A program made the position numbers and the translations under genes. Under the pieces are notes generated by a model. It ran no database searches and was not told the DNA's origin. It saw only the letters and a list, made by a program, of their open reading frames with translations. Of a DNA stretch of 64,000 nucleotides, positions 10,509 to 58,733 are shown in pieces. Position 1 is the stretch's first letter. Each line of letters opens with the position of its first letter. Location: positions 1 to 64,000 of the IMG/VR virus record IMGVR_UViG_3300017917_002374. The stretch is one strand, 5' to 3'.

Positions 10509-10532
10509 AATCTTACACCAATAAATAGATCT

Positions 10533-12524
10533 ATGTTTTTTGGATATCTCATTCTTTTAATTGCCATTCTTATTTCGGCGATAGCGGCATACTACTCTGT
10601 GGTAGGACTCACAGCGATATTTGCTGCGGCAGTGCTGCCCGTAATGATCATGGGCGGCGCACTAGAAGCCGGCAAGATTGTGGCCACAGTATGGTTACAC
10701 AATAACTGGCAACGCATAGGATGGGCATTCAAAACCTATCTAGTGCCTGCTATCGTATTTCTCATGCTGCTCACCAGCATGGGTATCTTTGGATTCCTTA
10801 GCAAAGCACACAGTGACCAAGGACTGGTCAGTGGTGACAGTCAAGCCAAACTGGCCATATATGATGAAAAAATTAAAACCTCTCGTGATAACATCGAAAC
10901 CAACCGCAAGGCTCTTAAACAAATGGATGAGGCTGTGGACCAAATCATGGGTCGCAGTACAGATGAAAAGGGAGCCGATAAGGCAGTGGCAGTGCGCCGG
11001 AATCAACAAAAGGAACGTACTAGGCTCCTTGCTGAAATTGACGCCGAGCAGAAAAAGATTGCTCGCCTTAACGAAGAAGCAGCGCCAATACGAGCAGAGA
11101 ATAGAAAGATTGAAGCCGAGGTAGGCCCAATCAAATATATCGCTGCACTGATCTATGGTGACAATCCTGATGCCAATCTACTGGAAGCAGCAGTGCGCTG
11201 GGTGATCATATTGATTGTGATTGTGTTTGATCCTTTGGCACTAACCTTGATTCTAGCTGGTAACAAACAACTGGAGTGGGCTCGCGAAGATCGTCGTAAA
11301 CAAGATCAAGAGTTTGATGAGAAGTATGTGGAAATACCCACAGAGCCAGCCAAGGAGTTTAGCCTATTCCAGTGGACCAAGCCAGAAGAAATTCCTCCTG
11401 AAGAAGAAAAGTCTGTTGAAGTGGCACAAAATGTACAAGACACGCCACCACCTCCGGAGGATCTTGGGTTGTGTCCAAAATGTGATACGCCTATACAGTC
11501 AGCACCGGGTATCGGCCCATTCTGCCCTAATAAAGACTGCGATGTAGTAGATGGGTTAGAACAGGCTAGAAAAGAATTGGCAGACAAAGAACAAGAAGAA
11601 TTTTTCTTCCGCAGCCGCATGATTGCCAAAGGCCTGGACGCAGAAGAACAAGAACGCATGATCACTGAAGCCAACACTGCTTTGGCGGCTATTGGCGATC
11701 AAGACTATGACATTGAGTCTGTGGTAGAACAAGCAGAAAAAATCAATGCCTACGAACAACAGATTGCCGGTCTAGCAGAAGAAAAAGAAAATCTAGCAAT
11801 TGAAAAAAACAAATTGCAAGAAGCACTGGATCTGTTGGCAGTGGAATTTGAAAGAGTAAACAACCACCTGCCTGATGTAGAAGTGTATAGAAACCAACTA
11901 GAACAGCAGGTGGCGCAACTGTCGGCTGAAAAATACATCATTGAACGAGAACTGGTTAGCACAAAAGAAACTCTTGAGTCCACAGTGCAAAGACAACAGG
12001 AACTAGAACAGTTTTTGGACACACTGCCTCCTCAATTGGATCAGCTGGAGACAGTAAAAACTCAACTGCAAACTGAAATTCAAAGTCTGTTGACTGACAA
12101 TCGTCAGTTGAGAGAATGGGTGGATCAACTGGAAAAAGATCTTAAAGAAGCAGTTGAACTAGCACAGCAAAAAACCCAAGCACTGGCACAAGTTCAAGAA
12201 CCGCAGGTGGCTGTGACAGCCGACAACGATGACGGCACTCCCAATGACACCAAGGCAACTTTTGGTACAGAATTTCCTAAAAATCAAAAGAAAGGTGATC
12301 TTTTTCTAAGAGTGGATTATTTGCCCAGCAGACTGTTCAAGTGGAACGGAACCAAGTGGATTGAGATTGATAGAGATCAAACCGATCGCTATGCCTATGA
12401 CAGCGCATATATAAGAATGCTGGTAGAAAAACTGCAATCAGGCGAATATGATATTGATGATTTAAACGAACTAGAAAGATCACAAGTAAGCACATATCTA
12501 AACGATCCTCGTACGGATGCATAG
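10533..12524 (+). CDS. Multi-pass membrane protein with coiled coils and a C4 zinc ribbon
   Basis: N-terminal TM helices, further TM near aa 225, CPKC...CPNKDC, long heptad region. Confidence 0.7.
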   Translation: MFFGYLILLIAILISAIAAYYSVVGLTAIFAAAVLPVMIMGGALEAGKIVATVWLHNNWQRIGWAFKTYLVPAIVFLMLLTSMGIFGFLSKAHSDQGLVSGDSQAKLAIYDEKIKTSRDNIETNRKALKQMDEAVDQIMGRSTDEKGADKAVAVRRNQQKERTRLLAEIDAEQKKIARLNEEAAPIRAENRKIEAEVGPIKYIAALIYGDNPDANLLEAAVRWVIILIVIVFDPLALTLILAGNKQLEWAREDRRKQDQEFDEKYVEIPTEPAKEFSLFQWTKPEEIPPEEEKSVEVAQNVQDTPPPPEDLGLCPKCDTPIQSAPGIGPFCPNKDCDVVDGLEQARKELADKEQEEFFFRSRMIAKGLDAEEQERMITEANTALAAIGDQDYDIESVVEQAEKINAYEQQIAGLAEEKENLAIEKNKLQEALDLLAVEFERVNNHLPDVEVYRNQLEQQVAQLSAEKYIIERELVSTKETLESTVQRQQELEQFLDTLPPQLDQLETVKTQLQTEIQSLLTDNRQLREWVDQLEKDLKEAVELAQQKTQALAQVQEPQVAVTADNDDGTPNDTKATFGTEFPKNQKKGDLFLRVDYLPSRLFKWNGTKWIEIDRDQTDRYAYDSAYIRMLVEKLQSGEYDIDDLNELERSQVSTYLNDPRTDA

Positions 12525-12873
12525 CAATTTTATTACTCCACCAGATTTCGTTGACAACAACTTACCAACTATATTGGTAGTTGATGCTGCTTGGGATGAT
12601 ATAGAAACTCTAGCATTGTATTGTCAAAATTCAAATTATCTTTATAATGTGTATATCTATCAAGATGTGATGTTCGATACCGAATGGCTGCAACAAGCTG
12701 CACTAAGATCACATGCCATAATCATGAACTCAGATCAAAGTGCATGCACCAACGAAAAAAATAAATTTTTGAAAGAATCTAAAACTTGGTATTACGGTCC
12801 TAATCGTTATCTAGGCAACAACAATCAGTTGCAATCTTTGATTGAATTTTTTATAAAACATAATGAACAATAA
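12517..12873 (+). CDS. Hypothetical protein
   Basis: Overlapping packing with both neighbours. Confidence 0.6.
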   Translation: MHSNFITPPDFVDNNLPTILVVDAAWDDIETLALYCQNSNYLYNVYIYQDVMFDTEWLQQAALRSHAIIMNSDQSACTNEKNKFLKESKTWYYGPNRYLGNNNQLQSLIEFFIKHNEQ

Positions 12874-14071
12874 TGTACACCATGTGCTGTGCAATTTTTG
12901 TGGTAAAAGTCGCAGCGAAGTAGACAAACTTATCGTGGCCAATGACGCCGGTATATGCAACGAGTGTATTGAGTTTTGTGCAGATCTCTTGAATCGCGAA
13001 CGTATCAAAAATATTCAATCTGATAAGAAAATTTCAAGATCACTTGATGCAGTCAAACTCAAGAACTATCTTGATGAGTATATTATTGGTCAAGAGCAGG
13101 CCAAGATAGCTCTAGCAGTGGCAGTGGTCAATCACTACAAAAGAATTTATTTTCAACCCGACATAGAACTAGAAAAAAGCAATCTGCTGATATATGGTCC
13201 TACTGGTGTTGGTAAAACCATGCTGGCAAAAACTGTAGCCAAATATCTAAATGTGCCATTTGTGATTGCTGATGCTACCACTCTTACTCAGGCAGGATAT
13301 GTAGGCGATGATGTTGAAAGTGTGATTTCAAGATTGTTTAGCGAAGCAGATTTTGACATTGACAAGTGCCAACAGGGCATAGTGTTTATTGACGAAATTG
13401 ATAAAATCAGTAGAAAAAATGAAAGCAGTAATCTGCACCGTGATGTAGGCGGCGAGGGTGTGCAACAGGCCCTGCTCAAGCTGGTCGAAGGTACCAAATG
13501 CACTGTGAGTGTGGAGTCAAGAAAAAAACACCCCAGTGTTGATACTGTGGAAATAGACACAAAAAATATTCTTTTTGTTGCAGGTGGAGCATTTGACGGG
13601 CTGGAAAAAGTGGTATCCGCTAGAGCCAAAGGCAACAGCATAGGATTTACATCTCAGGCTGTGGAAAATTCTTCTGGCCAGGTGTTGGCCGAAGATTTTA
13701 TCAACTACGGCATGATTCCTGAATTTATAGGCAGATTTCCTGTTACAGTAAGTGTTAATGCACTGGGACTAGAAGATCTAACAAGAGTGCTAGTTGAACC
13801 TAAAAGTAGTTTACTGCAACAAATGCAGTGGTATTTCAACACCGATGACATTGAGTTAGAGTTTGAAGATCAAGCAGTTCTAGCTATTGCACAACAGGCT
13901 CTGGACAGAGGAATTGGAGCAAGAGGACTTAAAACCATTTTAGAGCAGTGTCTTATGCCTGTTATGTATTCTTTGAACGAACTGAAAACTCAAGGTATAA
14001 GTAAAGTGAGGATTACTAAAAAAGTAATTACAGAAAATCAAAAACCGGAATTTATTAAACATGAGAGATAA
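12863..14071 (+). CDS. clpX: ClpX AAA+ unfoldase
   Basis: CNFC/CNEC zinc domain, GPTGVGKT, GYVG pore loop, DEIDK, RKKHP, IGF loop, GARGL. Confidence 0.96.
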   Translation: MNNNVHHVLCNFCGKSRSEVDKLIVANDAGICNECIEFCADLLNRERIKNIQSDKKISRSLDAVKLKNYLDEYIIGQEQAKIALAVAVVNHYKRIYFQPDIELEKSNLLIYGPTGVGKTMLAKTVAKYLNVPFVIADATTLTQAGYVGDDVESVISRLFSEADFDIDKCQQGIVFIDEIDKISRKNESSNLHRDVGGEGVQQALLKLVEGTKCTVSVESRKKHPSVDTVEIDTKNILFVAGGAFDGLEKVVSARAKGNSIGFTSQAVENSSGQVLAEDFINYGMIPEFIGRFPVTVSVNALGLEDLTRVLVEPKSSLLQQMQWYFNTDDIELEFEDQAVLAIAQQALDRGIGARGLKTILEQCLMPVMYSLNELKTQGISKVRITKKVITENQKPEFIKHER

Positions 14072-14297
14072 ACCACCTTTTTTAAATGGATCCATTGTTG
14101 TGGTTGTAAACGACAACGTGGAAAAAGCTCTGCGCAAGCTGAAAAAGAAAGTGCAAGAAAGCGGCATTCTTCAAGAGTTGCGTGAAAGAGAACAGTACGA
14201 AAAACCAACCACTTCTAGAAAACGAGCCAAAAACGCAGCACGTCGTCGTTGGCAGAAAAAACTGGAAAGCGAGCAGTTGCCTAAAAAACTGTTCTAA
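14061..14297 (+). CDS. rpsU: Ribosomal protein bS21
   Basis: VEKALRKLKKKVQESGIL.ELRERE.YEKPT. Confidence 0.93.
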   Translation: MRDKPPFLNGSIVVVVNDNVEKALRKLKKKVQESGILQELREREQYEKPTTSRKRAKNAARRRWQKKLESEQLPKKLF

Positions 14298-14548
14298 TGT
14301 ATATTGAATTTTGGTTGCCCAGCGGTGCAGGAGGTGTTGCTGCTTCGTATGCTAGCAGTGTGATACAACGAGAGATCAAGTCCTGGGCATCAAAATACAA
14401 TGTGGTCTACCGAACCAAGATAGTAAAGTACACTCTTAGACTATCGTTCAATAACAGTGAAGACTATGTGCATTTCCAGTTGAGCTGGAATCCTGACAAT
14501 GTTTTTGCCACTCGTTACTCCATTATAGAACCTGGCCAAATAAATTGA
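14297..14548 (+). CDS. Hypothetical protein
   Basis: TAATG coupling to rpsU. Confidence 0.55.
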   Translation: MYIEFWLPSGAGGVAASYASSVIQREIKSWASKYNVVYRTKIVKYTLRLSFNNSEDYVHFQLSWNPDNVFATRYSIIEPGQIN

Positions 14549-15446: not shown

Positions 15447-15448
15447 TC

Positions 15449-18954: not shown

Positions 18955-19009
18955 TTTGCTCACCCATAATTCTTTGAACCCTATATAAATATTATTAACG
19001 AGGAGCATC

Positions 19010-23059: not shown

Positions 23060-23231
23060 TTAAATCTCCTTGTAAGGTATAAAATATTTAGCGATCAAAT
23101 TAAACACACAAAATCTTAATCTGGGCAGATAAAATTTGCTGCGCTGCAATAAATACTATATAATGATGCATGTGATGCCCAGGTGGGGTCATTTCAGCAT
23201 TATGGAACATTTCGTCTAAAAGGAGAAACTC

Positions 23232-27282: not shown

Positions 27283-27318
27283 TAAATAATAGGAGACAGT
27301 TTGTCTCCTATTTTTTTA
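27283..27318 (+). promoter_or_regulatory. Late promoter TAAATA overlapping the 5' arm of a terminator hairpin at the head of the modular-protein cluster
   Basis: TAAATA 27283; aataggagaca-gtt-tgtctcctatt plus T run. Confidence 0.65.
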
Positions 27319-39258: not shown

Positions 39259-39259
39259 A

Positions 39260-39985
39260 ATGAGATACCACGAAATAGTAGCAAAAGATTCACCTGCTGA
39301 GGATAGGCATCCTAATGATCGTCCATATGGACCAGAAGCCAAACCTACCATGCCCAAGGGCACAGTTAGAGTGGATGTCAGCGACGTGTATGATTGGTAC
39401 AAGCTGGGCATGAACATCAGTGATCTTAAAAAAGCCAACAAGAGTCAGTTTGGTAAAGGTCCTCCTAGCACCATAGTTTCTTTTGGTGACGAAAACACTG
39501 AACACAAGTATATCAAGGATCTTGAAAATCTTGGACTTACGACCACTGACATAGATCCTGTTGATCCCAATCAGCCCCGAGGCATGCCGCGTCAGAAAGT
39601 TGATCCCACATTCAATGTAGATGAAAACTTTGCTGATGGCAAAGTAAAAGGCAAGAGTCGTCCGGGCCGTGTGAAACGTGCAGGCGCAAGTTGCAACGGG
39701 TCAGTAACTGATCTACGAGCTCGTGCCAAGAATGCTAGCGGTGAAAAGGCAAAAATGTATCACTGGTGTGCAAACATGAAAAGTGGTCGTAAGAAAGCCA
39801 ATGAAGCCAGCCCCACAGGACTAGAGTTTAAAGGTTACCCATGCACCAAGGACTGTTCAGGACATCAAGCCGGGCATGATTGGGCAGAGCGTTGGGGTAT
39901 TGAAAATCCAGATTCTTGTCCTTACAGCAACAACAGTTTCTGGGAGGGCTGTCTAGCTCGCACAGACGACTTTCAAGATGAGTAA
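39260..39985 (+). CDS. Modular protein with three E-joined modules, two of them Cys-rich
   Basis: MRYHEIV start; VDE-NFADGK..SC..HWC; ANE-AS..GYPCTKDCSGH. Confidence 0.65.
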   Translation: MRYHEIVAKDSPAEDRHPNDRPYGPEAKPTMPKGTVRVDVSDVYDWYKLGMNISDLKKANKSQFGKGPPSTIVSFGDENTEHKYIKDLENLGLTTTDIDPVDPNQPRGMPRQKVDPTFNVDENFADGKVKGKSRPGRVKRAGASCNGSVTDLRARAKNASGEKAKMYHWCANMKSGRKKANEASPTGLEFKGYPCTKDCSGHQAGHDWAERWGIENPDSCPYSNNSFWEGCLARTDDFQDE

Positions 39986-39993
39986 ATAAGCAT

Positions 39994-41349
39994 ATGAAAA
40001 TTACAGAAATTACCAAAGGTCGCACATTAGGCGGATTCCCAGTCCAAGTGTTAGACATACAAAACAGCGAAGTAGACGAAAATCAATATCGCCGCGAGTT
40101 TAAACGCAACGAGCTAGAACATGAGCTAGGACACGAAACAAACAACTATTCCGTTAGTATTAATGGTAAAAGTTGGAAAGTGTTTGCGAGCAAAGCACAT
40201 GCCGAAGCAGTGGCTCGCAGTGTACAAATGAAAAATCCTACCAAAAAAGTAGGTGTGCATGAGACTGGTGAATCAGTCTCAGAAGCACTCAAGCTGAACG
40301 CTCCGCAGCGTCGCATGAGTAGAGATGAGTTACAAGGCTATGCTGATCGTATTAAAACAGGTACTAAAACCAAACAAGATAAATTTGCACCAATTATTCA
40401 CGGGAGTAATATCAAGGCAATCACGCAGAGCGACAATCCTGATGACAAATGGGATCTGGATGATCTAGCGGCGCAGATTACAAAACGTCCTTCTAAAATA
40501 CTTGGCACCAATGCCAAAATGGAAAAAAGCCGTACAGAAGGCGAGATTGTGTATGACCTTACGCTACCAGCACTTTCCGGCATAGTGGTGGATGAAAGTA
40601 ACGGCGACTTTGTGGAAATCACAACCTGCCCAGGTGCAGGTGAATGCCAATTGTATTGTTATGCTCGCAAGGGCGGATATGTGATGTTTCCTGCCAGCTC
40701 CATGAGTGCGGCACAGGCCTTGAACTTCTTGGTTAATGATCCTGAGGGATACATGGCCATGGTGAATCGCGAAGTTAAAGCACTCAAAGGCAAAACAGAC
40801 AAGCATGGGATTAGACTGGTAGTACGTTGGCACGATGCAGGCGACTTCTTCAGCAAAGAATATTTAGATCTAGCCTATAAGGTAGCAGAAGCCAATCCTG
40901 ATGTGAAGTTTTATGCTTATACCAAGATGGGCGAAGTGGCAGTAGGAAACAAGCCGGCCAACTTTATTGTGAACTTCAGCACAGGTGCCAAGAGTCGTGA
41001 AGTGAAAAAAGTTACCTTACACAAACAAGCAGGCAACATTGTTAAGGACGCCATCACTGTGCCTAAGGACATGTTCCGCAACCTGTTTGTAACAGATGCC
41101 AAAGGCAAGTATGTGAAGGATGAAAAAGGTCGTACACAGGTGCGTGGCGAAGCGGAATGGAATCAATTCAAACAGCAGTTGGGCGCCAAGTATGACATTG
41201 ATCCAGACACCATTATTACATATGACCAAATGCTAAAGATTCCAGAAGGGCCTACGCCCAAGTGGCATGTGGTTATTTTCCCTGCAGGGCATGGCGATCG
41301 TGCTGCAAACAGACTGGACGTGATCAACAGTTTCTTAATGTTTCATTAA
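39994..41349 (+). CDS. Phage GP88-like Cys-cluster protein with N-terminal extra modules
   Basis: TCPGAGECQLYCYA, VRWHDAGDFFS, FYAYTK. Confidence 0.75.
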   Translation: MKITEITKGRTLGGFPVQVLDIQNSEVDENQYRREFKRNELEHELGHETNNYSVSINGKSWKVFASKAHAEAVARSVQMKNPTKKVGVHETGESVSEALKLNAPQRRMSRDELQGYADRIKTGTKTKQDKFAPIIHGSNIKAITQSDNPDDKWDLDDLAAQITKRPSKILGTNAKMEKSRTEGEIVYDLTLPALSGIVVDESNGDFVEITTCPGAGECQLYCYARKGGYVMFPASSMSAAQALNFLVNDPEGYMAMVNREVKALKGKTDKHGIRLVVRWHDAGDFFSKEYLDLAYKVAEANPDVKFYAYTKMGEVAVGNKPANFIVNFSTGAKSREVKKVTLHKQAGNIVKDAITVPKDMFRNLFVTDAKGKYVKDEKGRTQVRGEAEWNQFKQQLGAKYDIDPDTIITYDQMLKIPEGPTPKWHVVIFPAGHGDRAANRLDVINSFLMFH

Positions 41350-41354: not shown

Positions 41355-41457
41355 TAGCAAAAAAGCAACAAAAAACCCTAGTATTTGCTAGGGTTTTTTT
41401 ATGGTTGACCAAAAACACCCATTTCTATATAATATGGGTTCAATAACAAATTAGGAG
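41355..41457 (+). promoter_or_regulatory. Terminator + early promoter + SD cassette (start of early region)
   Basis: gcaaaaaagcaac box, aaccctag-tatttg-ctagggtt plus T run, TTGACC(41405)-17-TATAAT. Confidence 0.8.
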
Positions 41458-41462
41458 CAAAC

Positions 41463-41693: not shown

Positions 41694-41696
41694 AAC

Positions 41697-41753: not shown

Positions 41754-41757
41754 ACAC

Positions 41758-42250: not shown

Positions 42251-42458
42251 TACTGTGCTGAAATGGGTGGCCTGTGCTGTGACACTGTTTGGTGCCTTGT
42301 GTACCAGTCTACAGATAGATCCACTGAACATCTGGCTGTTGAATGCTGGCGCACTACTGTATCTAATCTGGAGTTGGAGAATTAGAGAATGGAGCCTGGT
42401 AACCATTAATTTTGGGTTGCTGGCAATTTATTTGGTTGGATTGGTTGTAAGGAGTTGA
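42234..42458 (+). CDS. Small membrane protein
   Basis: Three hydrophobic stretches; start uncertain. Confidence 0.55.
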   Translation: MCLLINTVLKWVACAVTLFGALCTSLQIDPLNIWLLNAGALLYLIWSWRIREWSLVTINFGLLAIYLVGLVVRS

Positions 42459-42459
42459 T

Positions 42460-42750
42460 ATGGAAAAAGGAACTTGTCCAGTTTGTAATGGTAGCGGCAG
42501 AGCCGCAGTGCCGATCAGTATGGAGCGATACAAGAATGTTATCACTGGCTATGACAAGGACACAGACACCCTACCCTGCACCAATTGCGGTGGACAGTAT
42601 ATGTTCGGATCGCCAAAAGGTCAAGTCCGTCTCAACCGGGATGGTGAACCCTGTCACCACAAATACTCCAGTCAGACGGTGGGACGATGCCTGACCGAAT
42701 ACACCTGCGAGTTTTGTGGAGATCGTTTTCAAATTGACTCAGGAGATTGA
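42460..42750 (+). CDS. Zinc-finger protein
   Basis: CPVCNGSG, CTNC, CHH, CEFC. Confidence 0.7.
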   Translation: MEKGTCPVCNGSGRAAVPISMERYKNVITGYDKDTDTLPCTNCGGQYMFGSPKGQVRLNRDGEPCHHKYSSQTVGRCLTEYTCEFCGDRFQIDSGD

Positions 42751-42752
42751 AC

Positions 42753-43160
42753 ATGGGACTGGACATGTACGCATACGTGGCCTCTAAGGCAGGACAGAAC
42801 GACGAGTACTGGGAACAGTATGATCTTCCAGAAGAAGAAAAGACTGTGGAGAAGCCACGTGAAATTGCCTACTGGCGTAAACATCCTAATCTGCATGGCT
42901 GGATGCACCAACTGTGGCGTAGAAAAAACATAGATCCTAGTGCAGATCCTACGTTCAATGGTGTGGAACTAGAACTCTCCTGGGAAGACCTAGACGAACT
43001 AGAACAGACTATTGAAAGTGGCAATCTACCAGCCACACAAGGATTCTTTTTTGGTGATAATGCAGATGAGTACTATCGCGAACAGGATCTTGAGTTTATT
43101 AAAACCGCAAGAAGTGAACTGTTCTGCGGACTGCGAGTGTTTTACAACTCCAGCTGGTAA
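42753..43160 (+). CDS. Conserved phage hypothetical protein
   Basis: MGLDMY, YWRKHPNLHGW, GFFFG, YNSSW. Confidence 0.7.
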   Translation: MGLDMYAYVASKAGQNDEYWEQYDLPEEEKTVEKPREIAYWRKHPNLHGWMHQLWRRKNIDPSADPTFNGVELELSWEDLDELEQTIESGNLPATQGFFFGDNADEYYREQDLEFIKTARSELFCGLRVFYNSSW

Positions 43161-43382
43161 TTATCTTGAATAGCGGCGCACATGATGGAACACTGGATGT
43201 CGTGCCTGTCGTGTGCCCGGATCACCGCCTACGGTGAGTCGTAGTGCAGGATCAATGCCGCGACTGAGATAGTGAATCAGATGTGCCATGTACCCGTCTG
43301 TGGTATAAAGCAAACAGGAGCCAGCGTCGTTGCATACCATGTAAGTGGTTATACCATTTTCGTCTTGGTTTCTAATAAGCAT
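43161..43382 (-). CDS. Hypothetical protein
   Basis: Fills the gap; TAAATA on the minus strand at 43404-43409. Confidence 0.5.
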   Translation of the reverse strand: MLIRNQDENGITTYMVCNDAGSCLLYTTDGYMAHLIHYLSRGIDPALRLTVGGDPGTRQARHPVFHHVRRYSR

Positions 43383-43413
43383 TTGTTGTTATTATTATAA
43401 CCATATTTATTGA

Positions 43414-43465
43414 TTGACCAAAAAGACCCATTTGTGTACAATACTGATATTGAACATTAAAGGAG
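43414..43465 (+). promoter_or_regulatory. Early promoter of rIIA
   Basis: TTGACC-aaaaagacccatttgtg-TACAAT; SD aggag. Confidence 0.75.
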
Positions 43466-43471
43466 CAGACA

Positions 43472-45646: not shown

Positions 45647-45648
45647 TC

Positions 45649-46488
45649 ATGGCATACTCATATCTCATTCAAGGCAAAAACATTGTTGTGGTAATTGACA
45701 ACAAGCCTTATACTATTACTTCAACTCATATTGGCTACGAGAAGCTGAAAGAAGCTATCAAGGCTGGTGATTGGGATACTGTAAAGTCAGTGGTTGATCC
45801 AGTTAAAGAGATTCTCAACTACGGTAAGGGTCTGGTGGCTGTGCAAGGTTCCAAAGTGTTCTACAAGGACCGTGAGATGGTGGGTGTGATCACCCAGCGT
45901 CTGATTGACATGTATCAGGAAGGCTTTCCTGTGGAGCCCTTGATCCTGTTCATGGAGAACTTGATGCAAAATCCCTCCAAGCGAGCTGTGGAAGAACTGT
46001 ACACCTTCCTGGAAAAAGGCAAACTGCCCATCACTCCAGATGGACACTTTCTGGCATACAAGAAGGTCCGTGCAGACTTTCTGGACATTCACTCGGGTAC
46101 TATGAACAATGCTCCTGGACAGATTGTGGAGATGGAACGTAATGAAGTAGACGATGACGCTAATCGTACCTGTTCCGCAGGCTTGCACTTCTGCTCCAAA
46201 GAGTATCTAGACCACTTTGGTGGCAGCGACAGTCGTACAGTGATCCTCAAGATCAACCCTGCTGACGTGGTTAGTATTCCAGCTGACTACAATGCAACCA
46301 AGGGTCGTGCCTGCCGTTATGAAGTGTTGGGTGAGTTGGGTGTGCATCCAGATGAAGCATTTATTGCACCTGTACAAACAGAAGCAGTGAGCAAAGATGT
46401 AAGCAACGAAGAACTGATCAAAGCCGCTGTGGATGCTGCTGTAAAGGCCGCACTTGCCGCGGTAAGAAATGGAACTGATCACAAATGA
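45649..46488 (+). CDS. rIIB: rIIB protein
   Basis: PITPDGHFLAYKKV, MERNEVDDD..TCSAGLH, INPADVVSIPADY..KGRAC.Y. Confidence 0.9.
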   Translation: MAYSYLIQGKNIVVVIDNKPYTITSTHIGYEKLKEAIKAGDWDTVKSVVDPVKEILNYGKGLVAVQGSKVFYKDREMVGVITQRLIDMYQEGFPVEPLILFMENLMQNPSKRAVEELYTFLEKGKLPITPDGHFLAYKKVRADFLDIHSGTMNNAPGQIVEMERNEVDDDANRTCSAGLHFCSKEYLDHFGGSDSRTVILKINPADVVSIPADYNATKGRACRYEVLGELGVHPDEAFIAPVQTEAVSKDVSNEELIKAAVDAAVKAALAAVRNGTDHK

Positions 46489-46724
46489 TGAAACACTACG
46501 ACTTTGAACTGGCAATGGGTGCCACTATTTCTGAATCGGTAGTACAAGAGATGGTGGCATCTGTTGTGGAAAAACAAACAGGTAAGAAAATCAAGAACAT
46601 AGACGCTGTGTACACAGATGGCAAGTTTAAAGGATACACAGCGACCTTTTATACGGACATTAAACCACAACGATTCAAGCCTAGCAAGGAATTTATTGTG
46701 GAAAATTATGGAGCAGAAGAATGA
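46485..46724 (+). CDS. Hypothetical protein
   Basis: ATGA coupled at both ends. Confidence 0.6.
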   Translation: MMKHYDFELAMGATISESVVQEMVASVVEKQTGKKIKNIDAVYTDGKFKGYTATFYTDIKPQRFKPSKEFIVENYGAEE

Positions 46725-47791
46725 GTCATTTTATTCGTAACGGTAATACCTGGCGGGTGGCCGACGAAGCCGCAATGGATCTTCACAAGCAACTGCCACC
46801 TGGTAATTATGTGGTCAAGCAGGATCAGTTTGGCAATTTGTTTTTAGAACAAGTGGACCACTTTGAACTCAAAGGCAAACGCTACGGTGAAAACGATAGC
46901 AATCGTGATCGTATCTATAGCACCTTTATGGACCGTTCAAGTTCAACTGGTGTGATGCTCACTGGCGAAAAGGGTTCAGGTAAAACCATGTTGGCCAAGA
47001 GTCTGGCTATTCAGTGTGCAGAAAACGGGCATCCTTGTATCTTGATCAACAGTGCCTGGCACGGAGATTCATTTTCTAAACTGCTGCAAGATATTCAACA
47101 GCCTTGCATGGTGTTGTTTGACGAGTTTGAAAAGGTGTACGACAATGATGAGCAGGAACAGATGCTCACACTGTTGGACGGAGTATTTCCTAGCAAGAAA
47201 CTGTTTGTGCTAACCTGCAACGACAAATGGCGAGTGAATCAACACATGCGCAATCGTCCTGGTCGTATCTATTATATGTTAGATTTTAAAGGACTGGACG
47301 AAGATTTTGTGACGGAATACTGTCACGATAATCTTAAAAATCTAGCCAACATTGACGGAGTGCTGACTGTGGCAGGTCTATTTGCCGAGTTTAACTTTGA
47401 CATGCTCAAAGCTCTTGTGGAAGAAATGAATCGTTACAACGAAACTGCTCAAGAGGCCATGCGCATGCTGAATACCAAGCCTGAGTTCGGCGACGGCGGC
47501 GAGTACAAGGTAACCTTGATTCCTGTGGGTCGTGGTCCGCTGAACACCAAGGAGTTTGACGAAGACGATTGGGAAGGCAATCCGCTTACATATCGTCGTG
47601 GCTGGCACTACGGCTACGACCCAGATCCTGAAAACGACAAGGAAGATTGGTATCGCATGCAGTTCACTTACCAAGACCTTAAAAAGGTTGAGGGCAAGGA
47701 TGGCAAGTTTGTTTATGTAAACAGTGTAGGCGACACCCTGATCCTTACACGCAAGAAGGATCGTTATAGCTATCATTGGAATGCGTTCTAA
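46721..47791 (+). CDS. AAA ATPase
   Basis: GEKGSGKT, LFDEFEK, LLDG, NRPGRI. Confidence 0.9.
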   Translation: MSHFIRNGNTWRVADEAAMDLHKQLPPGNYVVKQDQFGNLFLEQVDHFELKGKRYGENDSNRDRIYSTFMDRSSSTGVMLTGEKGSGKTMLAKSLAIQCAENGHPCILINSAWHGDSFSKLLQDIQQPCMVLFDEFEKVYDNDEQEQMLTLLDGVFPSKKLFVLTCNDKWRVNQHMRNRPGRIYYMLDFKGLDEDFVTEYCHDNLKNLANIDGVLTVAGLFAEFNFDMLKALVEEMNRYNETAQEAMRMLNTKPEFGDGGEYKVTLIPVGRGPLNTKEFDEDDWEGNPLTYRRGWHYGYDPDPENDKEDWYRMQFTYQDLKKVEGKDGKFVYVNSVGDTLILTRKKDRYSYHWNAF

Positions 47792-47793
47792 AA

Positions 47794-47911
47794 TTGTTGC
47801 AAAAAAGCAACAAAAACACCCTGTAAACCCTAGCATTTGCTAGGGTTTTTTTTTGGTTGACCAAAAATACCCATTTTGCTATACTATAGGCATACGTTAA
47901 CAAAAAGGAGC
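47794..47911 (+). promoter_or_regulatory. Palindrome + terminator + repeated early promoter cassette
   Basis: ttgttgc-aaaaaa-gcaacaa; aaccctagc-attt-gctagggtt plus T run; TTGACC(47857)-17-TATACT; 57 nt identical to 59188-59244. Confidence 0.9.
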
Positions 47912-47916
47912 CCAAA

Positions 47917-48180
47917 ATGAAAGCACTTCAATCATATGTAGAGCAAAAAAACAAATGGTATGCCTTGTTTAATAAGCAACCTAATTATTTGGACCTGAGC
48001 AAAACTGCGGATCGTCAGCGTATTGCCAACATGATAGACTCTGAGCTGAGCCCAGAAAATCTCACCTGCGATGGCGAATTGAGCCGCGCTCAGGTACAGG
48101 CACGTTACAACACCTTGACCAAGGTTGCAAAAGAATTGCAGCAACTGGATCCGTCTGTTAAATTTTACGAATTCGCTTAA
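47917..48180 (+). CDS. Small early hypothetical protein
   Basis: LSPENLTCDGE; follows the cassette. Confidence 0.7.
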   Translation: MKALQSYVEQKNKWYALFNKQPNYLDLSKTADRQRIANMIDSELSPENLTCDGELSRAQVQARYNTLTKVAKELQQLDPSVKFYEFA

Positions 48181-48391
48181 GGAGAAAAACATGATTGAAC
48201 TCACTTGTGCAAATGTACCTGGTGGCTGGCAAACAGAAATCAAAGCCAGTGGTTACCGGTTTGGTCCTGTGTTTAATCGTATCAACGACCTTTGGTCTTG
48301 GCAGCGAGAGTTCATTTACGCACAAAATTGATTTTGATTGACAAGTATTTGACCTTTTGCTATACTTTAGACTCCAAGTAAGGAGAATATT

Positions 48392-49990: not shown

Positions 49991-50013
49991 ACGATTGTAA
50001 AAATAAATATAGA

Positions 50014-50145: not shown

Positions 50146-50330
50146 AAACAGTTTGGATCATGGTCGTGCTAGTAATAGCAGATGGTGAATGGAGAGAGTG
50201 GGATCACCATTACGCTAGACTAGAAGAATGCCTTGAAGCCAAAGAAATACTCACACATCGCAGAGAACATCTTTTAACCATACGCTGCGAACCAAGACAA
50301 GTAAAATCACTTGACATTCCTGAAAAATAA
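50142..50330 (+). CDS. Small protein with N-terminal hydrophobic segment and Cys pair
   Basis: MKTVWIMVVLVI...EEC...RC. Confidence 0.55.
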   Translation: MKTVWIMVVLVIADGEWREWDHHYARLEECLEAKEILTHRREHLLTIRCEPRQVKSLDIPEK

Positions 50331-50345
50331 ATATACACTGTAATC

Positions 50346-50717
50346 TATTGCTGTATGAAGCAGATTGAAAGGCGTTCTGGACGCGGGTTCGACTCCCGCC
50401 TGGTCCACCAAAAGTATATTACTAAGAGTCCAGGTTCAGAGCGTGGCATAATATACTTCTGATGGGCCAGACATGGTTTCGACAGGGTGATGAGTAAGGA
50501 AGTGGACAGCACGGCAATGCGAAAGCCGTAGGACAGGGGTAACCCGGTCGTAGAAGCAAACCAAGTAAATGCAAAAGCATCTACAACAGAGAGCGCAGTA
50601 AAAGTAACCAAAGCACGTGGTTTCCGTTTCGGCGGTGCTCGTGTTGCGGCAGCTGACGCTGCTTTCGCCTAATCAGCGAAAACTCCGGGGCAGTTATGCC
50701 TTGTAACCCAAAATAGC
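50346..50717 (+). ncRNA. ssrA: Circularly permuted (two-piece) tmRNA
   Basis: Acceptor piece with T-arm gcggg-ttcgact-cccgc and ctggtcc-ACCA ends at 50410; coding piece starts gggccag at 50464; 7-bp acceptor stem with G3.U70; tag ORF 50571-50672; promoter TTGACA(50311)-17-TACACT; outer ends approximate. Confidence 0.92.
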
Positions 50718-50741
50718 AAAACGGCCTTCGGGCCGTTTTTT
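50718..50741 (+). terminator. Terminator after tmRNA
   Basis: aaaacggcc-ttcg-ggccgtttt plus T. Confidence 0.85.
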
Positions 50742-50758
50742 CTTTTATAAATATCTGC

Positions 50759-50959
50759 ATGTGGGTATTAATCATCAGCTTGTATTTGCCGCAGCCTTTA
50801 GGATTCACTCAGAGCAAAGGCATCATTCAGGCTCCACAGCCCAGCTACGAAACCTGCATGCGCGAACGCGACAGAATCAAAGCCACTTGGTACACAGACG
50901 GCTATCGTGTGAGTCCACGTTGTGTGTACATCAAATACTACGATCCTCGTGGCAGTTAA
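50759..50959 (+). CDS. Small hypothetical protein
   Basis: TATAAATA-N5-ATG; MWVLIISL, Cys pair. Confidence 0.55.
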   Translation: MWVLIISLYLPQPLGFTQSKGIIQAPQPSYETCMRERDRIKATWYTDGYRVSPRCVYIKYYDPRGS

Positions 50960-51000: not shown

Positions 51001-51058
51001 CTTAAGATGTTTAAATATTTTTGTGCAATGCACATAATAATATCTTAAGGAGATACAA

Positions 51059-55376: not shown

Positions 55377-55383
55377 AACCCAC

Positions 55384-55419
55384 TATAATAAAAAAGCCCG
55401 CAAGGGCTTTTTTATTATA
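55384..55419. terminator. Bidirectional terminator
   Basis: tataataaaaaagccc-gcaa-gggcttttttattata perfect inverted repeat. Confidence 0.85.
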
Positions 55420-55447
55420 AGACAGTTGTCCACTATAAGTAAATTCT

Positions 55448-55699
55448 ATGCTAGATTATGCCTTGACATTCTTTTCCATTTTTTTTCTTGATATTGTGTA
55501 TACATACTATCTAAGATGTGTGGCCAAAGAGCATGTGTTGGGCGCCAGTTTTTGGAGTGTGGCCTGTTATCTACTGGGCAGCATTGCAGTAATCAGCTAT
55601 ACCACAAATCATTGGTTGATTATTCCTGCGGTGATTGGTGCTTTCTGTGGGACCTATGTAGGGATGAAGCTGAAAAAGCTGAATTTTTTAACAGAGTAA
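55448..55699 (+). CDS. Small 3-TM membrane protein
   Basis: Hydrophobicity pattern. Confidence 0.6.
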   Translation: MLDYALTFFSIFFLDIVYTYYLRCVAKEHVLGASFWSVACYLLGSIAVISYTTNHWLIIPAVIGAFCGTYVGMKLKKLNFLTE

Positions 55700-55707
55700 A
55701 TACTGTT

Positions 55708-56352
55708 ATGAAACCTACCATTGCCATGTTTTTGTATCAGCCTCGTGCAAGTGTACAATGCGGTAATGCAATGATGGAGGCTCTATCTGACTACTACCGA
55801 TTCAAGATCTTTACCAAGCAAGAAATGGAAGAAGATTTTTTTGATGATGTAGACATTGTGGCTTTTCCGGGTGGTGACGGCGATAGTGAAAGCTATCGCT
55901 TTTTAATGAAACATCACCAAAAACGCATTCAAAATTTTGTTGCCAATGGCGGGCGTTATTTGGGCATTTGCATGGGCGCATACTGGGCAGGATCACATTA
56001 TTTTAATATTCTACATCATGTGGATGCTGTGCAGTATATCACTCGTCCTGGCACAGACACACGTAGACCTCATGCCAAGGCCTGCCCAGTGAACTGGCTT
56101 GGTGAACCCATGCGCATGTATTTTTACGATGGATGTGCATTGGTTGGAGACGAGCGTAGATTTGAAACAGTGGCTCGATACGCAAACGGTGACCCAATGG
56201 CCATATTTCAGGATCGTGTTGGAATCATGGGTTGCCATCCAGAAAGTCAACAGTGGTGGTACAACATGTACAACTATCTCAAGCCACACTATCATAATGG
56301 TTACCATCATCGTTTGCTGTTGGATTTTGTTGACCAACTCATGCGTCAATAA
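55708..56352 (+). CDS. BPL_N / class I glutamine amidotransferase-like protein
   Basis: FPGG, YLGICMGAY, HPE; likely start MKPTI at 55708. Confidence 0.8.
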   Translation: MKPTIAMFLYQPRASVQCGNAMMEALSDYYRFKIFTKQEMEEDFFDDVDIVAFPGGDGDSESYRFLMKHHQKRIQNFVANGGRYLGICMGAYWAGSHYFNILHHVDAVQYITRPGTDTRRPHAKACPVNWLGEPMRMYFYDGCALVGDERRFETVARYANGDPMAIFQDRVGIMGCHPESQQWWYNMYNYLKPHYHNGYHHRLLLDFVDQLMRQ

Positions 56353-57007: not shown

Positions 57008-57019
57008 TAGGAGGCTCAA

Positions 57020-58046: not shown

Positions 58047-58121
58047 ATGGCATGGACTACACCTCAAGCAACCGACCTTCGGTACGGTTTTGAAATTTCA
58101 ATGTATATCGCCAACCGCTAA
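58047..58121 (+). CDS. pqqA: Coenzyme PQQ precursor peptide MAWTTPQATDLRYGFEISMYIANR (not in ORF track)
   Basis: 24 aa; W..P...DLR.GFE...YI.NR with the ExxxY core; SD aaggag. Confidence 0.93.
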   Translation: MAWTTPQATDLRYGFEISMYIANR

Positions 58122-58139
58122 TATACATTTGAAATAAAG

Positions 58140-58616
58140 TTAGCCCTCTTGTAGGGCTTTCTTTTTGGCTCTTGTTTCTGCAAGAGTGCGTCTAATTTTT
58201 TCTCTGGTTTCTTCTGTTACGGCATGTCCTTTTCTAGATGCTGCCCAATTGGCTAAATGCTCGGGAGATTTAGTTTTACCTTTATGAGATTCAGATCGTT
58301 TCTTATTTGCGTTAAGCAAGGTACCATCAGCTCGTTGTCGTTCAGTTCGTTTGGTACATGCTTCTTTCATTTTAGCAATGGCTTCGGGTGTGTGTTTCTT
58401 GCCTTTCATCCCCATACCTTGTTTCATCCTTAACATTTCTTCTTGTCCTATTCTTTTAGAAAGTGCAAGCCAAGCAATTTTATCTTGTATATTTCCATGC
58501 TGCTCGTACAATACACGATGAGCTTCCGCATGCTCCTCTACTGTAAGCTCTACTAGATTACTCGGATCGTCTGTGCCGCCCATGTATTTGGGTATGATAT
58601 GGTGTATGTGTTTCAT
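58140..58616 (-). mobile_element. Free-standing HNH homing endonuclease with NUMOD3-type tail
   Basis: HHIIPKYMGGTDDPSNLV..EEHAEAH; GKKHTPE, GKTKSPEH, VTEETREKI; likely start MKHIH at 58616. Confidence 0.85.
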
Positions 58617-58733
58617 GTAATTATTTAGCAATCGTGACTTCAAAACCTAGTGTTAAAAAATCAAGATCTTTTTGGTTGACCATTTTGTTCACATGCACTA
58701 CAATACAAGCTCTATCACTTGATTCTCACAATT

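What the first reader, a model, noticed from the sequence alone, without database searches (positions are those of the whole stretch)
10522..58627. Recurring TAAATA-N5-ATG: late genes probably on leaderless mRNAs
Seen: exactly 5 nt separate TAAATA from an SD-less ATG at 10522/10533, 39983/39994, 50748/50759, 55697/55708 and, on the minus strand, 58627/58616. N4 occurs at 50004/50014 and N7 at 6808/6821. Early-cassette genes have strong AGGAG SDs instead. Known: T4-type late promoters (TATAAATA) start transcription a few nt downstream, and bS21 affects SD-led initiation. Inference: a leaderless late class, with phage bS21 possibly tuning initiation between classes.
Basis: partly seen in the sequence, partly recalled or inferred. 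Interest (0 to 1): 0.6.

Follow-up and report, generated by a model that had tools for sequence, protein, structure and literature searches.

The report
Late promoters fused to start codons
In this 355-kb freshwater jumbo phage, TAAATA is the core of a T4-style late promoter used about 100 times, and in about one site in six it sits 4-8 bases before an ATG with no ribosome-binding site, which points to leaderless late mRNAs, although no RNA data exist to prove it.

Summary
TAAATA-N5-ATG occurs 5 times in the window against 0.8 expected, and there is a genome-wide peak at N5.

It is one part of a larger signal. TAAATA is the commonest hexamer in co-directional intergenic DNA of the 354,959-bp phage (77 forward, 3 reverse-complement). 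It is strongly depleted inside genes in both orientations. It precedes the portal gene, the protease-capsid operon and a baseplate gene. The genome encodes a T4 gp55-type late sigma factor.

Distances from TAAATA to the gene start fall into two groups: N4-8 (18-20 genes, none with a Shine-Dalgarno, SD, sequence), almost nothing at N9-14, and N15-40 (about 62 genes, mostly with an SD). In T4 numbering TAAATA occupies -11 to -6, so N5 puts the A of ATG at +1.

Relatives in IMG/VR show the same split. 53 of 57 orthologues of gene 10533 keep TAAATA at N4-8. 54 of 56 portal orthologues keep it, 52 of them at N18-25. T4 itself has no short class.

The late-promoter and leaderless readings are well supported in silico, but only for a minority of late genes; the main structural genes have leaders with an SD. 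The bS21 idea is untested; that gene lies in the operon headed by the 10522 site. No RNA runs exist, so no start site was mapped.

The parts
10522..10527 (+). TAAATA late-promoter core, N5 before ATG 10533. This is the best-supported short-class site.
   Evidence: 53 of 57 unique orthologous loci keep TAAATA at N4-8 before the conserved ATG, with diverged flanks and no SD. The base before ATG is T in 50 and C in 3 of these orthologues.
10533..14548 (+). SD-less operon of five overlapping or abutting genes: 10533-12524 (663 aa, N-terminal membrane helix), 12517-12873, 12863-14071, 14061-14297 (bS21) and 14297-14548.
   Evidence: Gene calls and upstream sequences. bS21 matches PF01165 with E=1.4e-18 at 14097-14249. 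Weak PHROG hits to virion structural and tape-measure proteins for the first gene.
10476..10504 (+). Sigma-70-like TTGCAA-N17-TATAAT just upstream of the 10522 site; a possible second (host-type) promoter that would give a ~23-nt leader without an SD.
   Evidence: 10 of 12 matches. This is a consensus match only, and such hits are not strongly above the shuffled controls.
39983..39988 (+). TAAATA N5 before ATG 39994. Its TAA is the stop codon of gene 39227-39985.
   Evidence: The start is supported by the conserved N-terminal motif M[KR]xxE[LF], but none of ~60 orthologues has the short spacing; 4 have TAAATA at N20-28.
39994..41349 (+). 451-aa protein (Pfam GP88 domain), last member of a run of paralogues that share the N-terminal motif M[RK]xxE[FL].
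50748..50753 (+). TAAATA (full TATAAATA here) N5 before ATG 50759, directly after the terminator hairpin of the tmRNA gene.
   Evidence: Terminator at 50718-50739 with a T tract. tmRNA at 50297-50741.
50759..50959 (+). 66-aa hydrophobic ORF; uncertain as a gene.
   Evidence: Coding score 8.2. No PHROG or Pfam hit.
55697..55702 (+). TAAATA N5 before ATG 55708. Its TAA is the stop codon of the 83-aa membrane ORF 55448-55699.
   Evidence: 21 of 48 unique orthologous loci have TAAATA at N4-8, 4 have it at N21-23 and 23 have none.
55708..56352 (+). 214-aa glutamine-amidotransferase-like protein (BPL_N/GATase).
   Evidence: Pfam BPL_N residues 17-97 align to profile positions 18-98. The N-terminus MKPTIA is conserved in relatives. 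The upstream in-frame extension has coding score -8.6.
58622..58627 (-). TAAATA N5 before ATG 58616 of a minus-strand HNH endonuclease gene. The upstream neighbour is divergent, so there is no read-through transcript.
58140..58616 (-). HNH homing-endonuclease-like gene, 158 aa if it starts at the ATG.
   Evidence: phrog_655 E=1.5e-18 and Pfam HNH. The protein starts MKHIHHIIPK. TTG alternatives at 58631 and 58643.
6808..6813 (+). TAAATA N7 before ATG 6821 (165-aa gene 6821-7318).
   Evidence: An in-frame stop lies 9 nt upstream and there is no SD. No relatives were found for this gene.
50004..50009 (+). TAAATA N4 before ATG 50014; probably not a gene start.
   Evidence: The ORF is only 43 aa with coding score 2.9. 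The site lies after a terminator and before the tmRNA promoter.
5552..5557 (+). Leadered TAAATA site, N33 to ATG 5591, with a TAAGGAGG SD.
6496..6501 (+). Leadered TAAATA site, N27 to ATG 6529, with an AGGAGG SD. Its TAA is the upstream gene's stop codon.
7326..7331 (+). Leadered TAAATA site, N17 to ATG 7349, with an AAGGA SD.
18986..18991 (+). Leadered TAAATA site (full TATAAATA), N18 to ATG 19010, with an AGGAG SD.
27283..27288 (+). Leadered TAAATA site, N35 to ATG 27324, heading the run of large paralogous genes 27324-41349.
51012..51017 (+). Leadered TAAATA site, N41 to ATG 51059, with a TAAGGAG SD.
23085..23090 (-). Leadered TAAATA site on the minus strand, N25 to ATG 23059, with an AAGGAG SD.
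41405..41462 (+). First of eight early cassettes in the window: GTTGACC -35, TGnTATAnT extended -10, conserved leader, and AAGGAG 5-7 nt before the start. The others begin near 41699, 43414, 47857, 48338, 59190, 59577 and 59878.

Best explanation
What it is. The window is the left end of a complete 354,959-bp jumbo phage with terminal repeats, assembled from freshwater metagenomes. The phage is distantly T4-like: it has a gp23-type capsid protein, a portal protein, and a gp55-type late sigma factor.

The promoter. TAAATA is the conserved core of its late promoters, equivalent to positions -11 to -6 of the T4 box TATAAATA. Host RNA polymerase carrying the phage gp55 homologue would recognise it without a -35 element.

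Two layouts. About 100 such promoters are scattered through the genome and come in two layouts:
- In most, TAAATA lies 15-40 nt before the start codon, so the transcript has a short leader that carries an SD.
- In about 18-20 genes it lies 4-8 nt before an ATG with no SD. Transcription would then begin at, or within 1-3 nt of, the A of ATG, giving a leaderless late mRNA that ribosomes must start on through its 5'-terminal AUG.

Spacings of 9-14 nt are avoided because such a leader is too short for an SD and too long to act as leaderless.

Shown: the motif, its strand bias, its avoidance in genes, the sigma-factor gene, the two-group spacing, and its conservation in relatives. Inferred: the position of the transcription start, late timing, and leaderless translation.
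For: Promoter identity:
- TAAATA is the top hexamer in co-directional intergenic DNA: 77 forward against 3 reverse-complement, 19.6-fold enriched.
- The matrix shows only the hexamer, a mild A preference just upstream, an AT-rich stretch downstream, and no -35 element. The T4 review describes the same features.
- Inside genes the motif is depleted on the sense strand (49 observed, ~127 expected) and on the antisense strand (38 observed, ~129 expected). These are the lowest ratios among all 15 same-composition hexamers. That argues for a DNA-level signal.
- A gp55-family sigma factor is encoded at 224261-225115 (phrog_12791 E=6.6e-73; the T4 gp55 family phrog_234 E=1.4e-23). The closest annotated homologues are in PA5oct, Atu_ph07 and CBB/Rak2-like jumbo phages.
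- An ATAAATA late promoter has already been predicted in CBB and GAP32.
- TAAATA precedes the portal gene, the protease-to-capsid operon, structural proteins and a gp25-like baseplate wedge gene.
- 54 of 56 portal orthologues keep the hexamer amid diverged flanks: 50 at N18-25, single cases at N7, N15, N30 and N33, and none at N8-14.

Short class:
- Using a start definition that ignores the motif, spacings are N4-8 = 18, N9-13 = 1 and N14-40 = 62. SD cores occur in 0 of 18 against 38 of 62. 17 of the 18 starts are ATG. The binomial test of 18 against 1 gives p = 8e-5.
- The T4 box occupies -13 to -6, so N5 puts the A of ATG at +1.
- The base before ATG is a pyrimidine in 18 of 19 short-class genes against 119 of 269 other genes (Fisher p = 1e-5). 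In orthologues of gene 10533 it is T in 50 and C in 3. This fits the known pyrimidine(-1)/purine(+1) preference at start sites.
- Six sites allow no read-through transcription. They follow strong terminators (50748, 67179) or face a divergent gene (58627, 294426, 338531, 280516).
- 53 of 57 orthologues of gene 10533 have N4-8 and none has N9 or more. 21 of 48 orthologues of 55708 have N4-8 and none has N9-20.
- In 80 related loci the unique TAAATA-to-ATG spacings are N4-8 = 16, 19, 6, 13, 7 and N9-13 = 0, 1, 1, 3, 2.
- In four related 340-525-kb genomes, N4-7 against N9-12 counts are 34/14, 43/19, 55/30 and 114/41. In T4 they are 16/19.
Against: - No transcript 5' end has been mapped. No RNA run holds this phage and the host is unknown.
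- gp33 and a T4-type sliding clamp were not detected, so the T4 activation mechanism may not apply. The start position relative to the box is borrowed from T4.
- Spacing varies from 4 to 8 nt, with a mode of N6-7 at the best-conserved gene. Many of these mRNAs would therefore carry a 1-3-nt leader unless start-site choice is flexible.
- The pyrimidine bias before ATG is weak in orthologues of 55708 (10 of 21).
- At 39983, 55697, 273088 and 279974 the TAA of the motif is the upstream gene's stop codon, so translational coupling on read-through transcripts could serve those genes. The 39983 arrangement is not conserved.
- Folding energy of the first 40 nt does not set the short class apart.
- My gene calls come from a home-made caller.
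Confidence: 0.62

Rival explanations
1. TAAATA is a late promoter, but the short-spaced copies matter only for downstream genes or are tolerated by genome compaction. The adjacent ATG genes would be translated from longer read-through transcripts by termination-reinitiation or coupling, not from leaderless mRNA.
For: Genes are tightly packed and many SD-less genes overlap their upstream neighbour. At 39983, 55697, 273088 and 279974 the TAA of the motif is the upstream gene's stop codon. The 39983 arrangement is absent from orthologues. 23 of 48 orthologues of 55708 have no TAAATA and abut an upstream gene.
Against: This does not explain why the hexamer is confined to N4-8 and absent from N9-14 in this genome and in relatives. 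It does not explain the retention in 53 of 57 orthologues of gene 10533, nor the pyrimidine before ATG. Six sites lie behind terminators or divergent genes, where no read-through transcript exists.
Confidence: 0.2
2. At N4-8, TAAATA acts in the RNA as an SD-independent, A/U-rich ribosome-recruiting element, perhaps read by S1 or by ribosomes carrying the phage bS21. Under this model its spacing mimics SD-to-start spacing.
For: The 4-8-nt spacing resembles the optimal SD spacing. No SD is present in any of the 18 short-class genes. The phage encodes bS21 in an operon headed by such a site. Phage bS21 has been proposed to bias translation late in infection.
Against: The same strict hexamer occurs at N15-40 with an SD in between, and it is conserved there. 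It is avoided on the antisense strand of genes, at 0.29 of expectation, which an RNA signal would not require. It has no complementarity to the anti-SD sequence. The gp55 homologue together with the T4 precedent explains the motif without a new mechanism.
Confidence: 0.08
3. The pattern is a compositional by-product: TAA stop codons and AT-rich intergenic DNA lying just before start codons.
For: The total number of TAAATA in the window is not above expectation (30 found, 33 expected). Some copies contain a stop codon.
Against: The count is 5 against 0.8 expected in the window. The strand bias is 77 to 3. None of the 14 other same-composition hexamers shows the N5 peak or a comparable depletion. 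The hexamer is invariant across diverged orthologous spacers.
Confidence: 0.03

Closest known systems
Bacteriophage T4 late promoters (TATAAATA at -13 to -6, read by gp55 with gp33 and the gp45 clamp)
   Same: The core sequence TAAATA is the same. There is no -35 element and the downstream segment is AT-rich. A gp55-family sigma factor is encoded. The sites precede virion genes on either strand.
   Different: Only the hexamer is conserved here; T(-13) and A(-12) are not. The sigma homologue is 296 aa, with about 140 extra N-terminal residues. No gp33 or T4-type clamp was detected. T4 shows no excess of TAAATA at N4-7 before ATG (16, against 19 at N9-12).
Predicted ATAAATA late promoter of Rak2-like jumbo phages (Pectobacterium phage CBB, Cronobacter phage GAP32)
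   Same: The motif is the same. It was found before structural genes in jumbo phages that encode a gp55-like factor and lack detectable gp33 and gp45. These phages are among the best matches to this phage's sigma factor.
   Different: That work reports 35 sites and no spacing classes or leaderless subset. Here there are about 100 sites with a two-group spacing that is conserved across hundreds of uncultivated relatives.
Leaderless mRNAs of bacteria and phages (for example lambda cI from PRM; common in Actinobacteria)
   Same: The promoter element lies a fixed few bases before an ATG, there is no SD, and the start codon is ATG. The lambda cI and Actinobacteria examples are from my own knowledge, not from a tool result.
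   Different: The promoter here is a phage late-sigma type, not a sigma-70 -10 element. Leaderless status is inferred, not mapped. Jumbo phages with mapped starts showed none: AR9 leaders are 26-491 nt, and phiKZ early transcripts include no leaderless ones.
T4 homing-endonuclease genes expressed from late promoters
   Same: The minus-strand HNH gene at 58140-58616 has TAAATA directly before its start, which suggests late-only expression. The comparison with T4 is from my own knowledge; the paper found (PMC2988022) discusses late promoters of T4 mobile elements, but I did not read it.
   Different: In T4, control works through leader RNA structure on earlier transcripts. Here there would be no leader at all.

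Membership tests
T4-type (gp55-dependent) late promoter | Conserved -10-region box TATAAATA (core TAAATA) with no -35 element | tested here: met
   The hexamer is invariant and directional (77 forward, 3 reverse). There is no upstream conservation except A at -12 in 39 of 77 sites. The first two bases of the octamer are not conserved. The review notes that -13/-12 also vary among T4 relatives.
T4-type (gp55-dependent) late promoter | The phage encodes a gp55-family late sigma factor | tested here: met
   phrog_12791 E=6.6e-73 and phrog_234 E=1.4e-23 at 224261-225115. 42% identity to the PA5oct 'sigma factor for late transcription'.
T4-type (gp55-dependent) late promoter | AT-rich segment immediately downstream of the box | tested here: met
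   A+T is 71-81% at four positions (the 2nd, 4th, 5th and 7th bases) after the hexamer, against 57% genome-wide. The feature is described.
T4-type (gp55-dependent) late promoter | Located before late (virion) genes | tested here: met
   Found before the portal gene (N21), the protease-to-gp23-capsid operon (N30), structural proteins (N18, N32) and a gp25-like baseplate wedge gene (N7). Non-structural genes are also served.
T4-type (gp55-dependent) late promoter | Co-activator gp33 and sliding clamp gp45 | tested here: not met
   phrog_223 (gp45) gave no match. phrog_254 (gp33) gave only E=0.02 over 23 residues. A DsbA-like protein is present (E=3e-10). Very diverged homologues cannot be excluded.
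T4-type (gp55-dependent) late promoter | Transcription starts about 6 nt after the box, late in infection | not testable with these tools
   No RNA run holds the phage.
Leaderless mRNA | The transcript 5' end lies at, or within a few nt of, the A of the start codon | not testable with these tools
   Geometry only: N5 equals +1 in T4 numbering; the N4-8 range; a pyrimidine at -1 in 18 of 19 genes.
Leaderless mRNA | No Shine-Dalgarno sequence, and an ATG start codon | tested here: met
   0 of 18 have an SD core and 17 of 18 start with ATG.
Shine-Dalgarno-type ribosome-binding site | Complementarity to the 16S rRNA 3' end, acting in the RNA only | tested here: not met
   TAAATA shares no part of the AAGGAGGT core. 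It is also avoided on the antisense strand of genes.
Host sigma-70 promoter | TTGACA-N17-TATAAT with T at the last -10 position | tested here: not met
   There is no -35 element in the matrix and the last base is A. The phage has a separate, clear sigma-70-type class (GTTGACC ... TGcTATAcT) before its early cassettes.

The most novel reading that the evidence does not exclude
A large clade of uncultivated freshwater T4-like jumbo phages has a conserved set of late genes whose gp55-type promoters are fused to the start codon. One of these sites heads the operon that carries the phage's own bS21. The phage would then shift part of its late translation to an SD-independent, 5'-AUG-dependent mode, and phage bS21 would take part in partitioning ribosomes between SD-led and leaderless messages.
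Probability: 0.12. Interest if true: 0.8.

Novelty: new variant of a known kind. Interest (0 to 1): 0.55.

Why it matters
T4-type late promoters and leaderless mRNAs are each well known. A conserved subset of late-sigma promoters placed so that transcription would begin at the start codon has not been described in the papers I could search. The two jumbo phages with mapped start sites showed no leaderless transcripts.

If confirmed, this would have three consequences:
- It would give a simple rule for annotating start codons and late genes in hundreds of uncultivated jumbo phages.
- It would show that a gp55-type holoenzyme can feed leaderless translation.
- It would offer a concrete setting in which to test what a phage-encoded bS21 does, because the gene lies in such an operon.

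It also warns gene callers not to search for an SD, or extend ORFs upstream, at these sites. The longest-ORF call at 55516 is an example of such an error.

Tried and rejected
- Sequencing runs: 20 DNA metagenome runs from ponds, lakes, rivers and soil hold the stretch, but none is RNA. I did not use read laying, because contigs from DNA runs cannot show transcript ends.
- Nearest phages: a near-identity search of the phage collection gave nothing. A protein search with gene 39994 gave only distant Streptomyces and other phages.
- Full T4 octamer: TATAAATA is not enriched.
- Overall count: TAAATA in the window is not above chance. The signal lies in placement and strand, not in abundance.
- 5' RNA structure: folding energy of the first 40 nt does not differ between the short class, the leadered class and other genes (p = 0.4-0.5). 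This is uninformative.
- Start-site signal at leadered sites: a pyrimidine-purine step after the hexamer gave only a broad A-rich zone 4-7 nt downstream, with no sharp position.
- Relatives of gene 6821: none found.
- PHROG functions of short-class genes: mostly unknown, so the class cannot be called structural.
- Tail sheath: Pfam PF04984 was not found.
- PA5oct omics paper: it reports only TATAATA/TTGAC promoters and says nothing on leaderless mRNAs.
- Not used: the large protein searches, structure prediction and complex prediction, because nothing in the claim rests on them.
- Operator limits: no other genetic code was needed, and nothing human-like or toxin-like came up.

Full report
**1. 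The observation**

The pattern TAAATA-N5-ATG occurs five times in the window, at exactly the coordinates given. That compares with 0.81 +/- 0.76 expected, and none of 100 dinucleotide shuffles reached five. The N4 site (50004) and the N7 site (6808) are also there. The total number of TAAATA in the window is not unusual (30 found, 33 expected), and the full T4 octamer TATAAATA is not enriched (3 found, 1.75 expected). Whatever is special therefore lies in where the hexamer sits.

**2. The genome**

The window is the first 64 kb of a single 354,959-bp virus record with direct terminal repeats, rated complete. It is found in pond, lake, river and soil metagenomes, but in no RNA run.

It encodes the following:
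- a T4 gp23-type major capsid protein (PF07068, E=1.9e-101);
- a portal protein and a head protease;
- a gp25-like baseplate wedge protein;
- a bS21 ribosomal protein;
- a permuted tmRNA.

Genes are about 90% on the + strand in my own gene call (415 genes, 94% coding).

**3. TAAATA is a genome-wide directional signal**

Among all hexamers in co-directional intergenic DNA, TAAATA ranks first: 77 forward copies against 3 of its reverse complement, 19.6-fold over its genome-wide frequency. AAGGAG has 26 copies. 100 of the 187 copies on both strands lie in the ~5.5% of the genome that is non-coding.

Aligning the 77 sites shows only the hexamer, a mild preference for A just upstream (39 of 77), an AT-rich stretch downstream, and nothing at a -35 position.

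Inside genes the hexamer is strongly avoided:
- sense strand: 49 observed against about 127 expected from synonymous-codon shuffles;
- antisense strand: 38 observed against about 129 expected.

These ratios (0.38 and 0.29) are the lowest of all 15 hexamers with the same base composition. The others range from 0.72 to 1.05 on the antisense strand. Avoidance on the antisense strand is what a DNA-level signal such as a promoter predicts. A signal read only in mRNA would not require it.

**4. Why a late promoter**

- The genome encodes a gp55-family sigma factor at 224261-225115 (phrog_12791 'sigma factor for late transcription' E=6.6e-73; the T4 gp55 family phrog_234 E=1.4e-23).
- Its best annotated relatives are in Pseudomonas phage PA5oct (42% identity), Sinorhizobium phage Phosso, Agrobacterium phage Atu_ph07 and the Rak2-like phages such as CBB.
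- For CBB and GAP32 an ATAAATA motif before structural genes has already been proposed as the late promoter. Those phages likewise have a gp55-like gene but no detectable gp33 or gp45 (PMC5259590).
- The same holds here. There is no T4-type clamp and no convincing gp33 (E=0.02). A DsbA-like protein is present (E=3e-10).
- TAAATA precedes the portal gene (N21), the operon running from a 303-aa gene through the protease to the capsid gene (N30), two large structural proteins (N18, N32) and the baseplate wedge gene (N7).
- The T4 review describes late promoters as an 8-bp TATA box one helical turn upstream of the start, with an AT-rich downstream segment and no -35 conservation. It places the box at -13 to -6, with -13/-12 variable among relatives (PMC2988020). 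TAAATA is therefore the -11 to -6 core.

A separate, clearly sigma-70-like class heads the early cassettes: GTTGACC, about 14 nt, then TTTGCTATACT, a conserved leader, and AAGGAG 5-7 nt before the start.

**5. Two spacing classes**

For the 77 intergenic sites, the distances to my called gene starts are 5 (six sites), 7 (five sites), none from 8 to 14, and then a broad group from 15 to about 36.

I repeated this with a start definition that ignores the motif: the first start codon of an ORF of at least 50 aa with coding score at least 8, within 120 nt. Under that definition 111 of the 187 hexamers have a gene start downstream:

| Spacing | Genes | With an SD core |
|---|---|---|
| N4-8 | 18 | 0 |
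| N9-13 | 1 | 0 |
| N14-40 | 62 | 38 |

In the N4-8 class, 17 of the 18 start codons are ATG. The contrast of 18 against 1 has binomial p = 8e-5. Adding 55708 and 58616, which the 'first start' filter missed, brings the short class to about 20 genes, roughly one in six TAAATA-associated genes.

In T4 numbering, five intervening bases put the A of ATG at +1. From general knowledge of bacterial RNA polymerase, start sites fall within a few bases around the preferred position, which would cover N4-8. A leader of 3-8 nt (N9-14) can neither hold an SD nor behave as leaderless, and that explains the gap.

**6. Independent support for a start at the ATG**

- The base before the ATG is a pyrimidine in 18 of 19 short-class genes (T 14, C 4). 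In other ATG genes it is a pyrimidine in 119 of 269, and A is the commonest base (Fisher p = 1.2e-5). Pyrimidine at -1 with purine at +1 is the usual start-site preference (general knowledge).
- Six short-class sites cannot be served by read-through transcription. Two follow strong terminators (50748 after the tmRNA gene; 67179). Four face a divergent neighbour (58627, 294426, 338531, 280516).
- Family profiles or coding scores support the ATG as the true start for 55708, 120358, 217760 and 234938.

**7. Relatives**

IMG/VR holds hundreds of related contigs.

*Gene 10533.* In 57 unique loci, 53 keep TAAATA just upstream of the conserved start, and none has it further away:
- Protein identity to the query is 46-81%, and the N-terminus M[IL]FG... 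is conserved.
- Spacings are N4 (6 loci), N5 (6), N6 (22), N7 (16) and N8 (3).
- The flanks are diverged and there is no SD.

*Portal gene.* In 56 unique loci, 54 keep the hexamer. Fifty of them have it at N18-25, with a mode of N21. One each has N15, N30 and N33, and one has switched to N7. None has N8-14.

*Gene 55708.* In 48 unique loci, 21 have N4-8, 4 have N21-23, none has N9-20, and 23 have no hexamer. Here the pyrimidine bias is weak, at 10 of 21.

*Gene 39994.* The start is conserved, but the short spacing is not. Four relatives have the hexamer at N20-28.

*Pooled counts.*
- Across the 80 loci around gene 39994, unique TAAATA-to-ATG spacings are 16, 19, 6, 13, 7 for N4-8 and 0, 1, 1, 3, 2 for N9-13. 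Most of these ATGs open long ORFs.
- In four related genomes of 342-525 kb, the N4-7 and N9-12 counts are 34/14, 43/19, 55/30 and 114/41. In T4 they are 16/19, with no excess over a reversed-pattern control.

The short class is therefore a property of this clade, not of T4.

**8. The five reported sites, one by one**

- **10522:** the strongest case. It is conserved, heads an SD-less five-gene operon that includes bS21, and has a possible sigma-70-like promoter 20 nt upstream.
- **55697:** good. The start is verified and the arrangement recurs in relatives, but its TAA is the stop codon of a small membrane ORF.
- **58627 (-):** good on context, because the neighbour is divergent. The start is plausible but not proven.
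- **50748:** good on context, because it follows a terminator. The 66-aa ORF is uncertain.
- **39983:** the weakest. Its TAA is a stop codon, the site is internal to a gene run, and the arrangement is not conserved.
- **6808 (N7):** belongs to the class.
- **50004 (N4):** probably does not precede a gene.

**9. bS21**

The gene is at 14061-14297 (PF01165, E=1.4e-18). It is the fourth gene of the operon headed by the 10522 site, so by this reading it is itself a late gene. Late expression of phage bS21 alongside structural genes has been reported for other freshwater phages (PMC9723584).

Nothing here tests whether bS21 affects the choice between SD-led and leaderless messages. From textbook knowledge, bS21 helps SD-dependent initiation and is dispensable for leaderless mRNAs, so a simple 'bS21 favours the leaderless class' model is not the obvious expectation.

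**10. Verdict**

I put the late-promoter reading at about 0.85-0.9. I put the claim that the N4-8 subset yields leaderless or near-leaderless late mRNAs at about 0.6, pending 5'-end mapping.

The finding is a new variant of known things: a T4-type late promoter combined with leaderless initiation. It applies to a minority of late genes. The literature I could search describes the motif in related jumbo phages but not the spacing classes. Jumbo phages with mapped starts had no leaderless transcripts.

**11. Limits**

- Counts in related loci are de-duplicated by sequence but not corrected for phylogeny.
- The host is unknown. The tmRNA type and the sigma-70/SD-type early signals point away from Bacteroidetes and perhaps towards Proteobacteria.

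Noticed in passing
window 50297-50741 (+): The phage encodes a permuted (two-piece) tmRNA: Rfam tmRNA_permuted 90.6 bits and beta_tmRNA 87 bits, and ARAGORN calls a tag peptide. It has its own TTGACA-N17-TACACT promoter at 50311-50339 and a terminator at 50718-50739. It may hint at a proteobacterial or cyanobacterial host.
   Followed up: partly
window 41405-48391 and 59190-59937: Eight near-identical early cassettes: GTTGACCaaaaatacccat-TTTGCTATACT, then a conserved leader (ATAGGCATACGTTAACAAAAAGGAGC) and the start codon of a small gene. The conservation of the leader beyond the SD is unexplained.
   Followed up: partly
window 27324-41349 (+): A run of seven large genes (434-803 aa), six of which begin with the motif M[RK]xxE[FL]. 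In relatives the paralogues start the same way, and a conserved AAAGTGAGCA often lies just before TAAATA. This could be a shared N-terminal targeting signal of virion or ejected proteins. The last gene carries Pfam GP88.
   Followed up: partly
window 14061-14297 (+): Phage bS21 (78 aa) has no SD and overlaps its neighbours on both sides, inside an operon whose first product is a 663-aa membrane-anchored protein with weak virion and tape-measure hits.
   Followed up: partly
G000 224261-225115 (+) (L003:1504-2394): The gp55-type late sigma factor is 296 aa. T4 gp55 (185 aa) aligns only to the C-terminal part of this family (profile positions 141-248 of 286), so about 140 N-terminal residues have no counterpart in T4. 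They might replace the missing gp33 or clamp contacts.
   Followed up: no
G000 123133-123357 (+): A homologue of T4 DsbA, the dsDNA-binding enhancer of some late promoters (phrog_639, E=3e-10), is present although gp33 and gp45 were not found.
   Followed up: no
window 55448-55699 (+): An 83-aa hydrophobic ORF with positive coding score lies between a bidirectional terminator (55383-55420) and gene 55708. A longest-ORF gene call (55516-56352) wrongly swallows it.
   Followed up: yes
G000 120345 and 121777 (+): Two short-class sites 1.4 kb apart share the identical 16-nt string TAAATACAACACTATG, before a DNA-binding protein gene and a 191-aa gene. This suggests duplication of the promoter-start unit.
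   Followed up: no
G000 117121-117134 (+): TAAATA-N5-ATG lies in frame inside a longer ORF, with the in-frame stop 1014 nt upstream. It is a possible internal late start giving a 308-aa shorter product, or a chance match.
   Followed up: no
G000 150052 and 288197 (+): Two TAAATA-N5-ATG copies follow directly after what look like tRNA 3' ends (GGTTCGA-type T arms). ARAGORN was not run on that part of the genome, so this is unconfirmed.
   Followed up: no
L298 (IMG/VR portal orthologue): One portal orthologue out of 56 has TAAATA at N7 instead of about N21. A gene can therefore switch between the leadered and the short layout during evolution.
   Followed up: no
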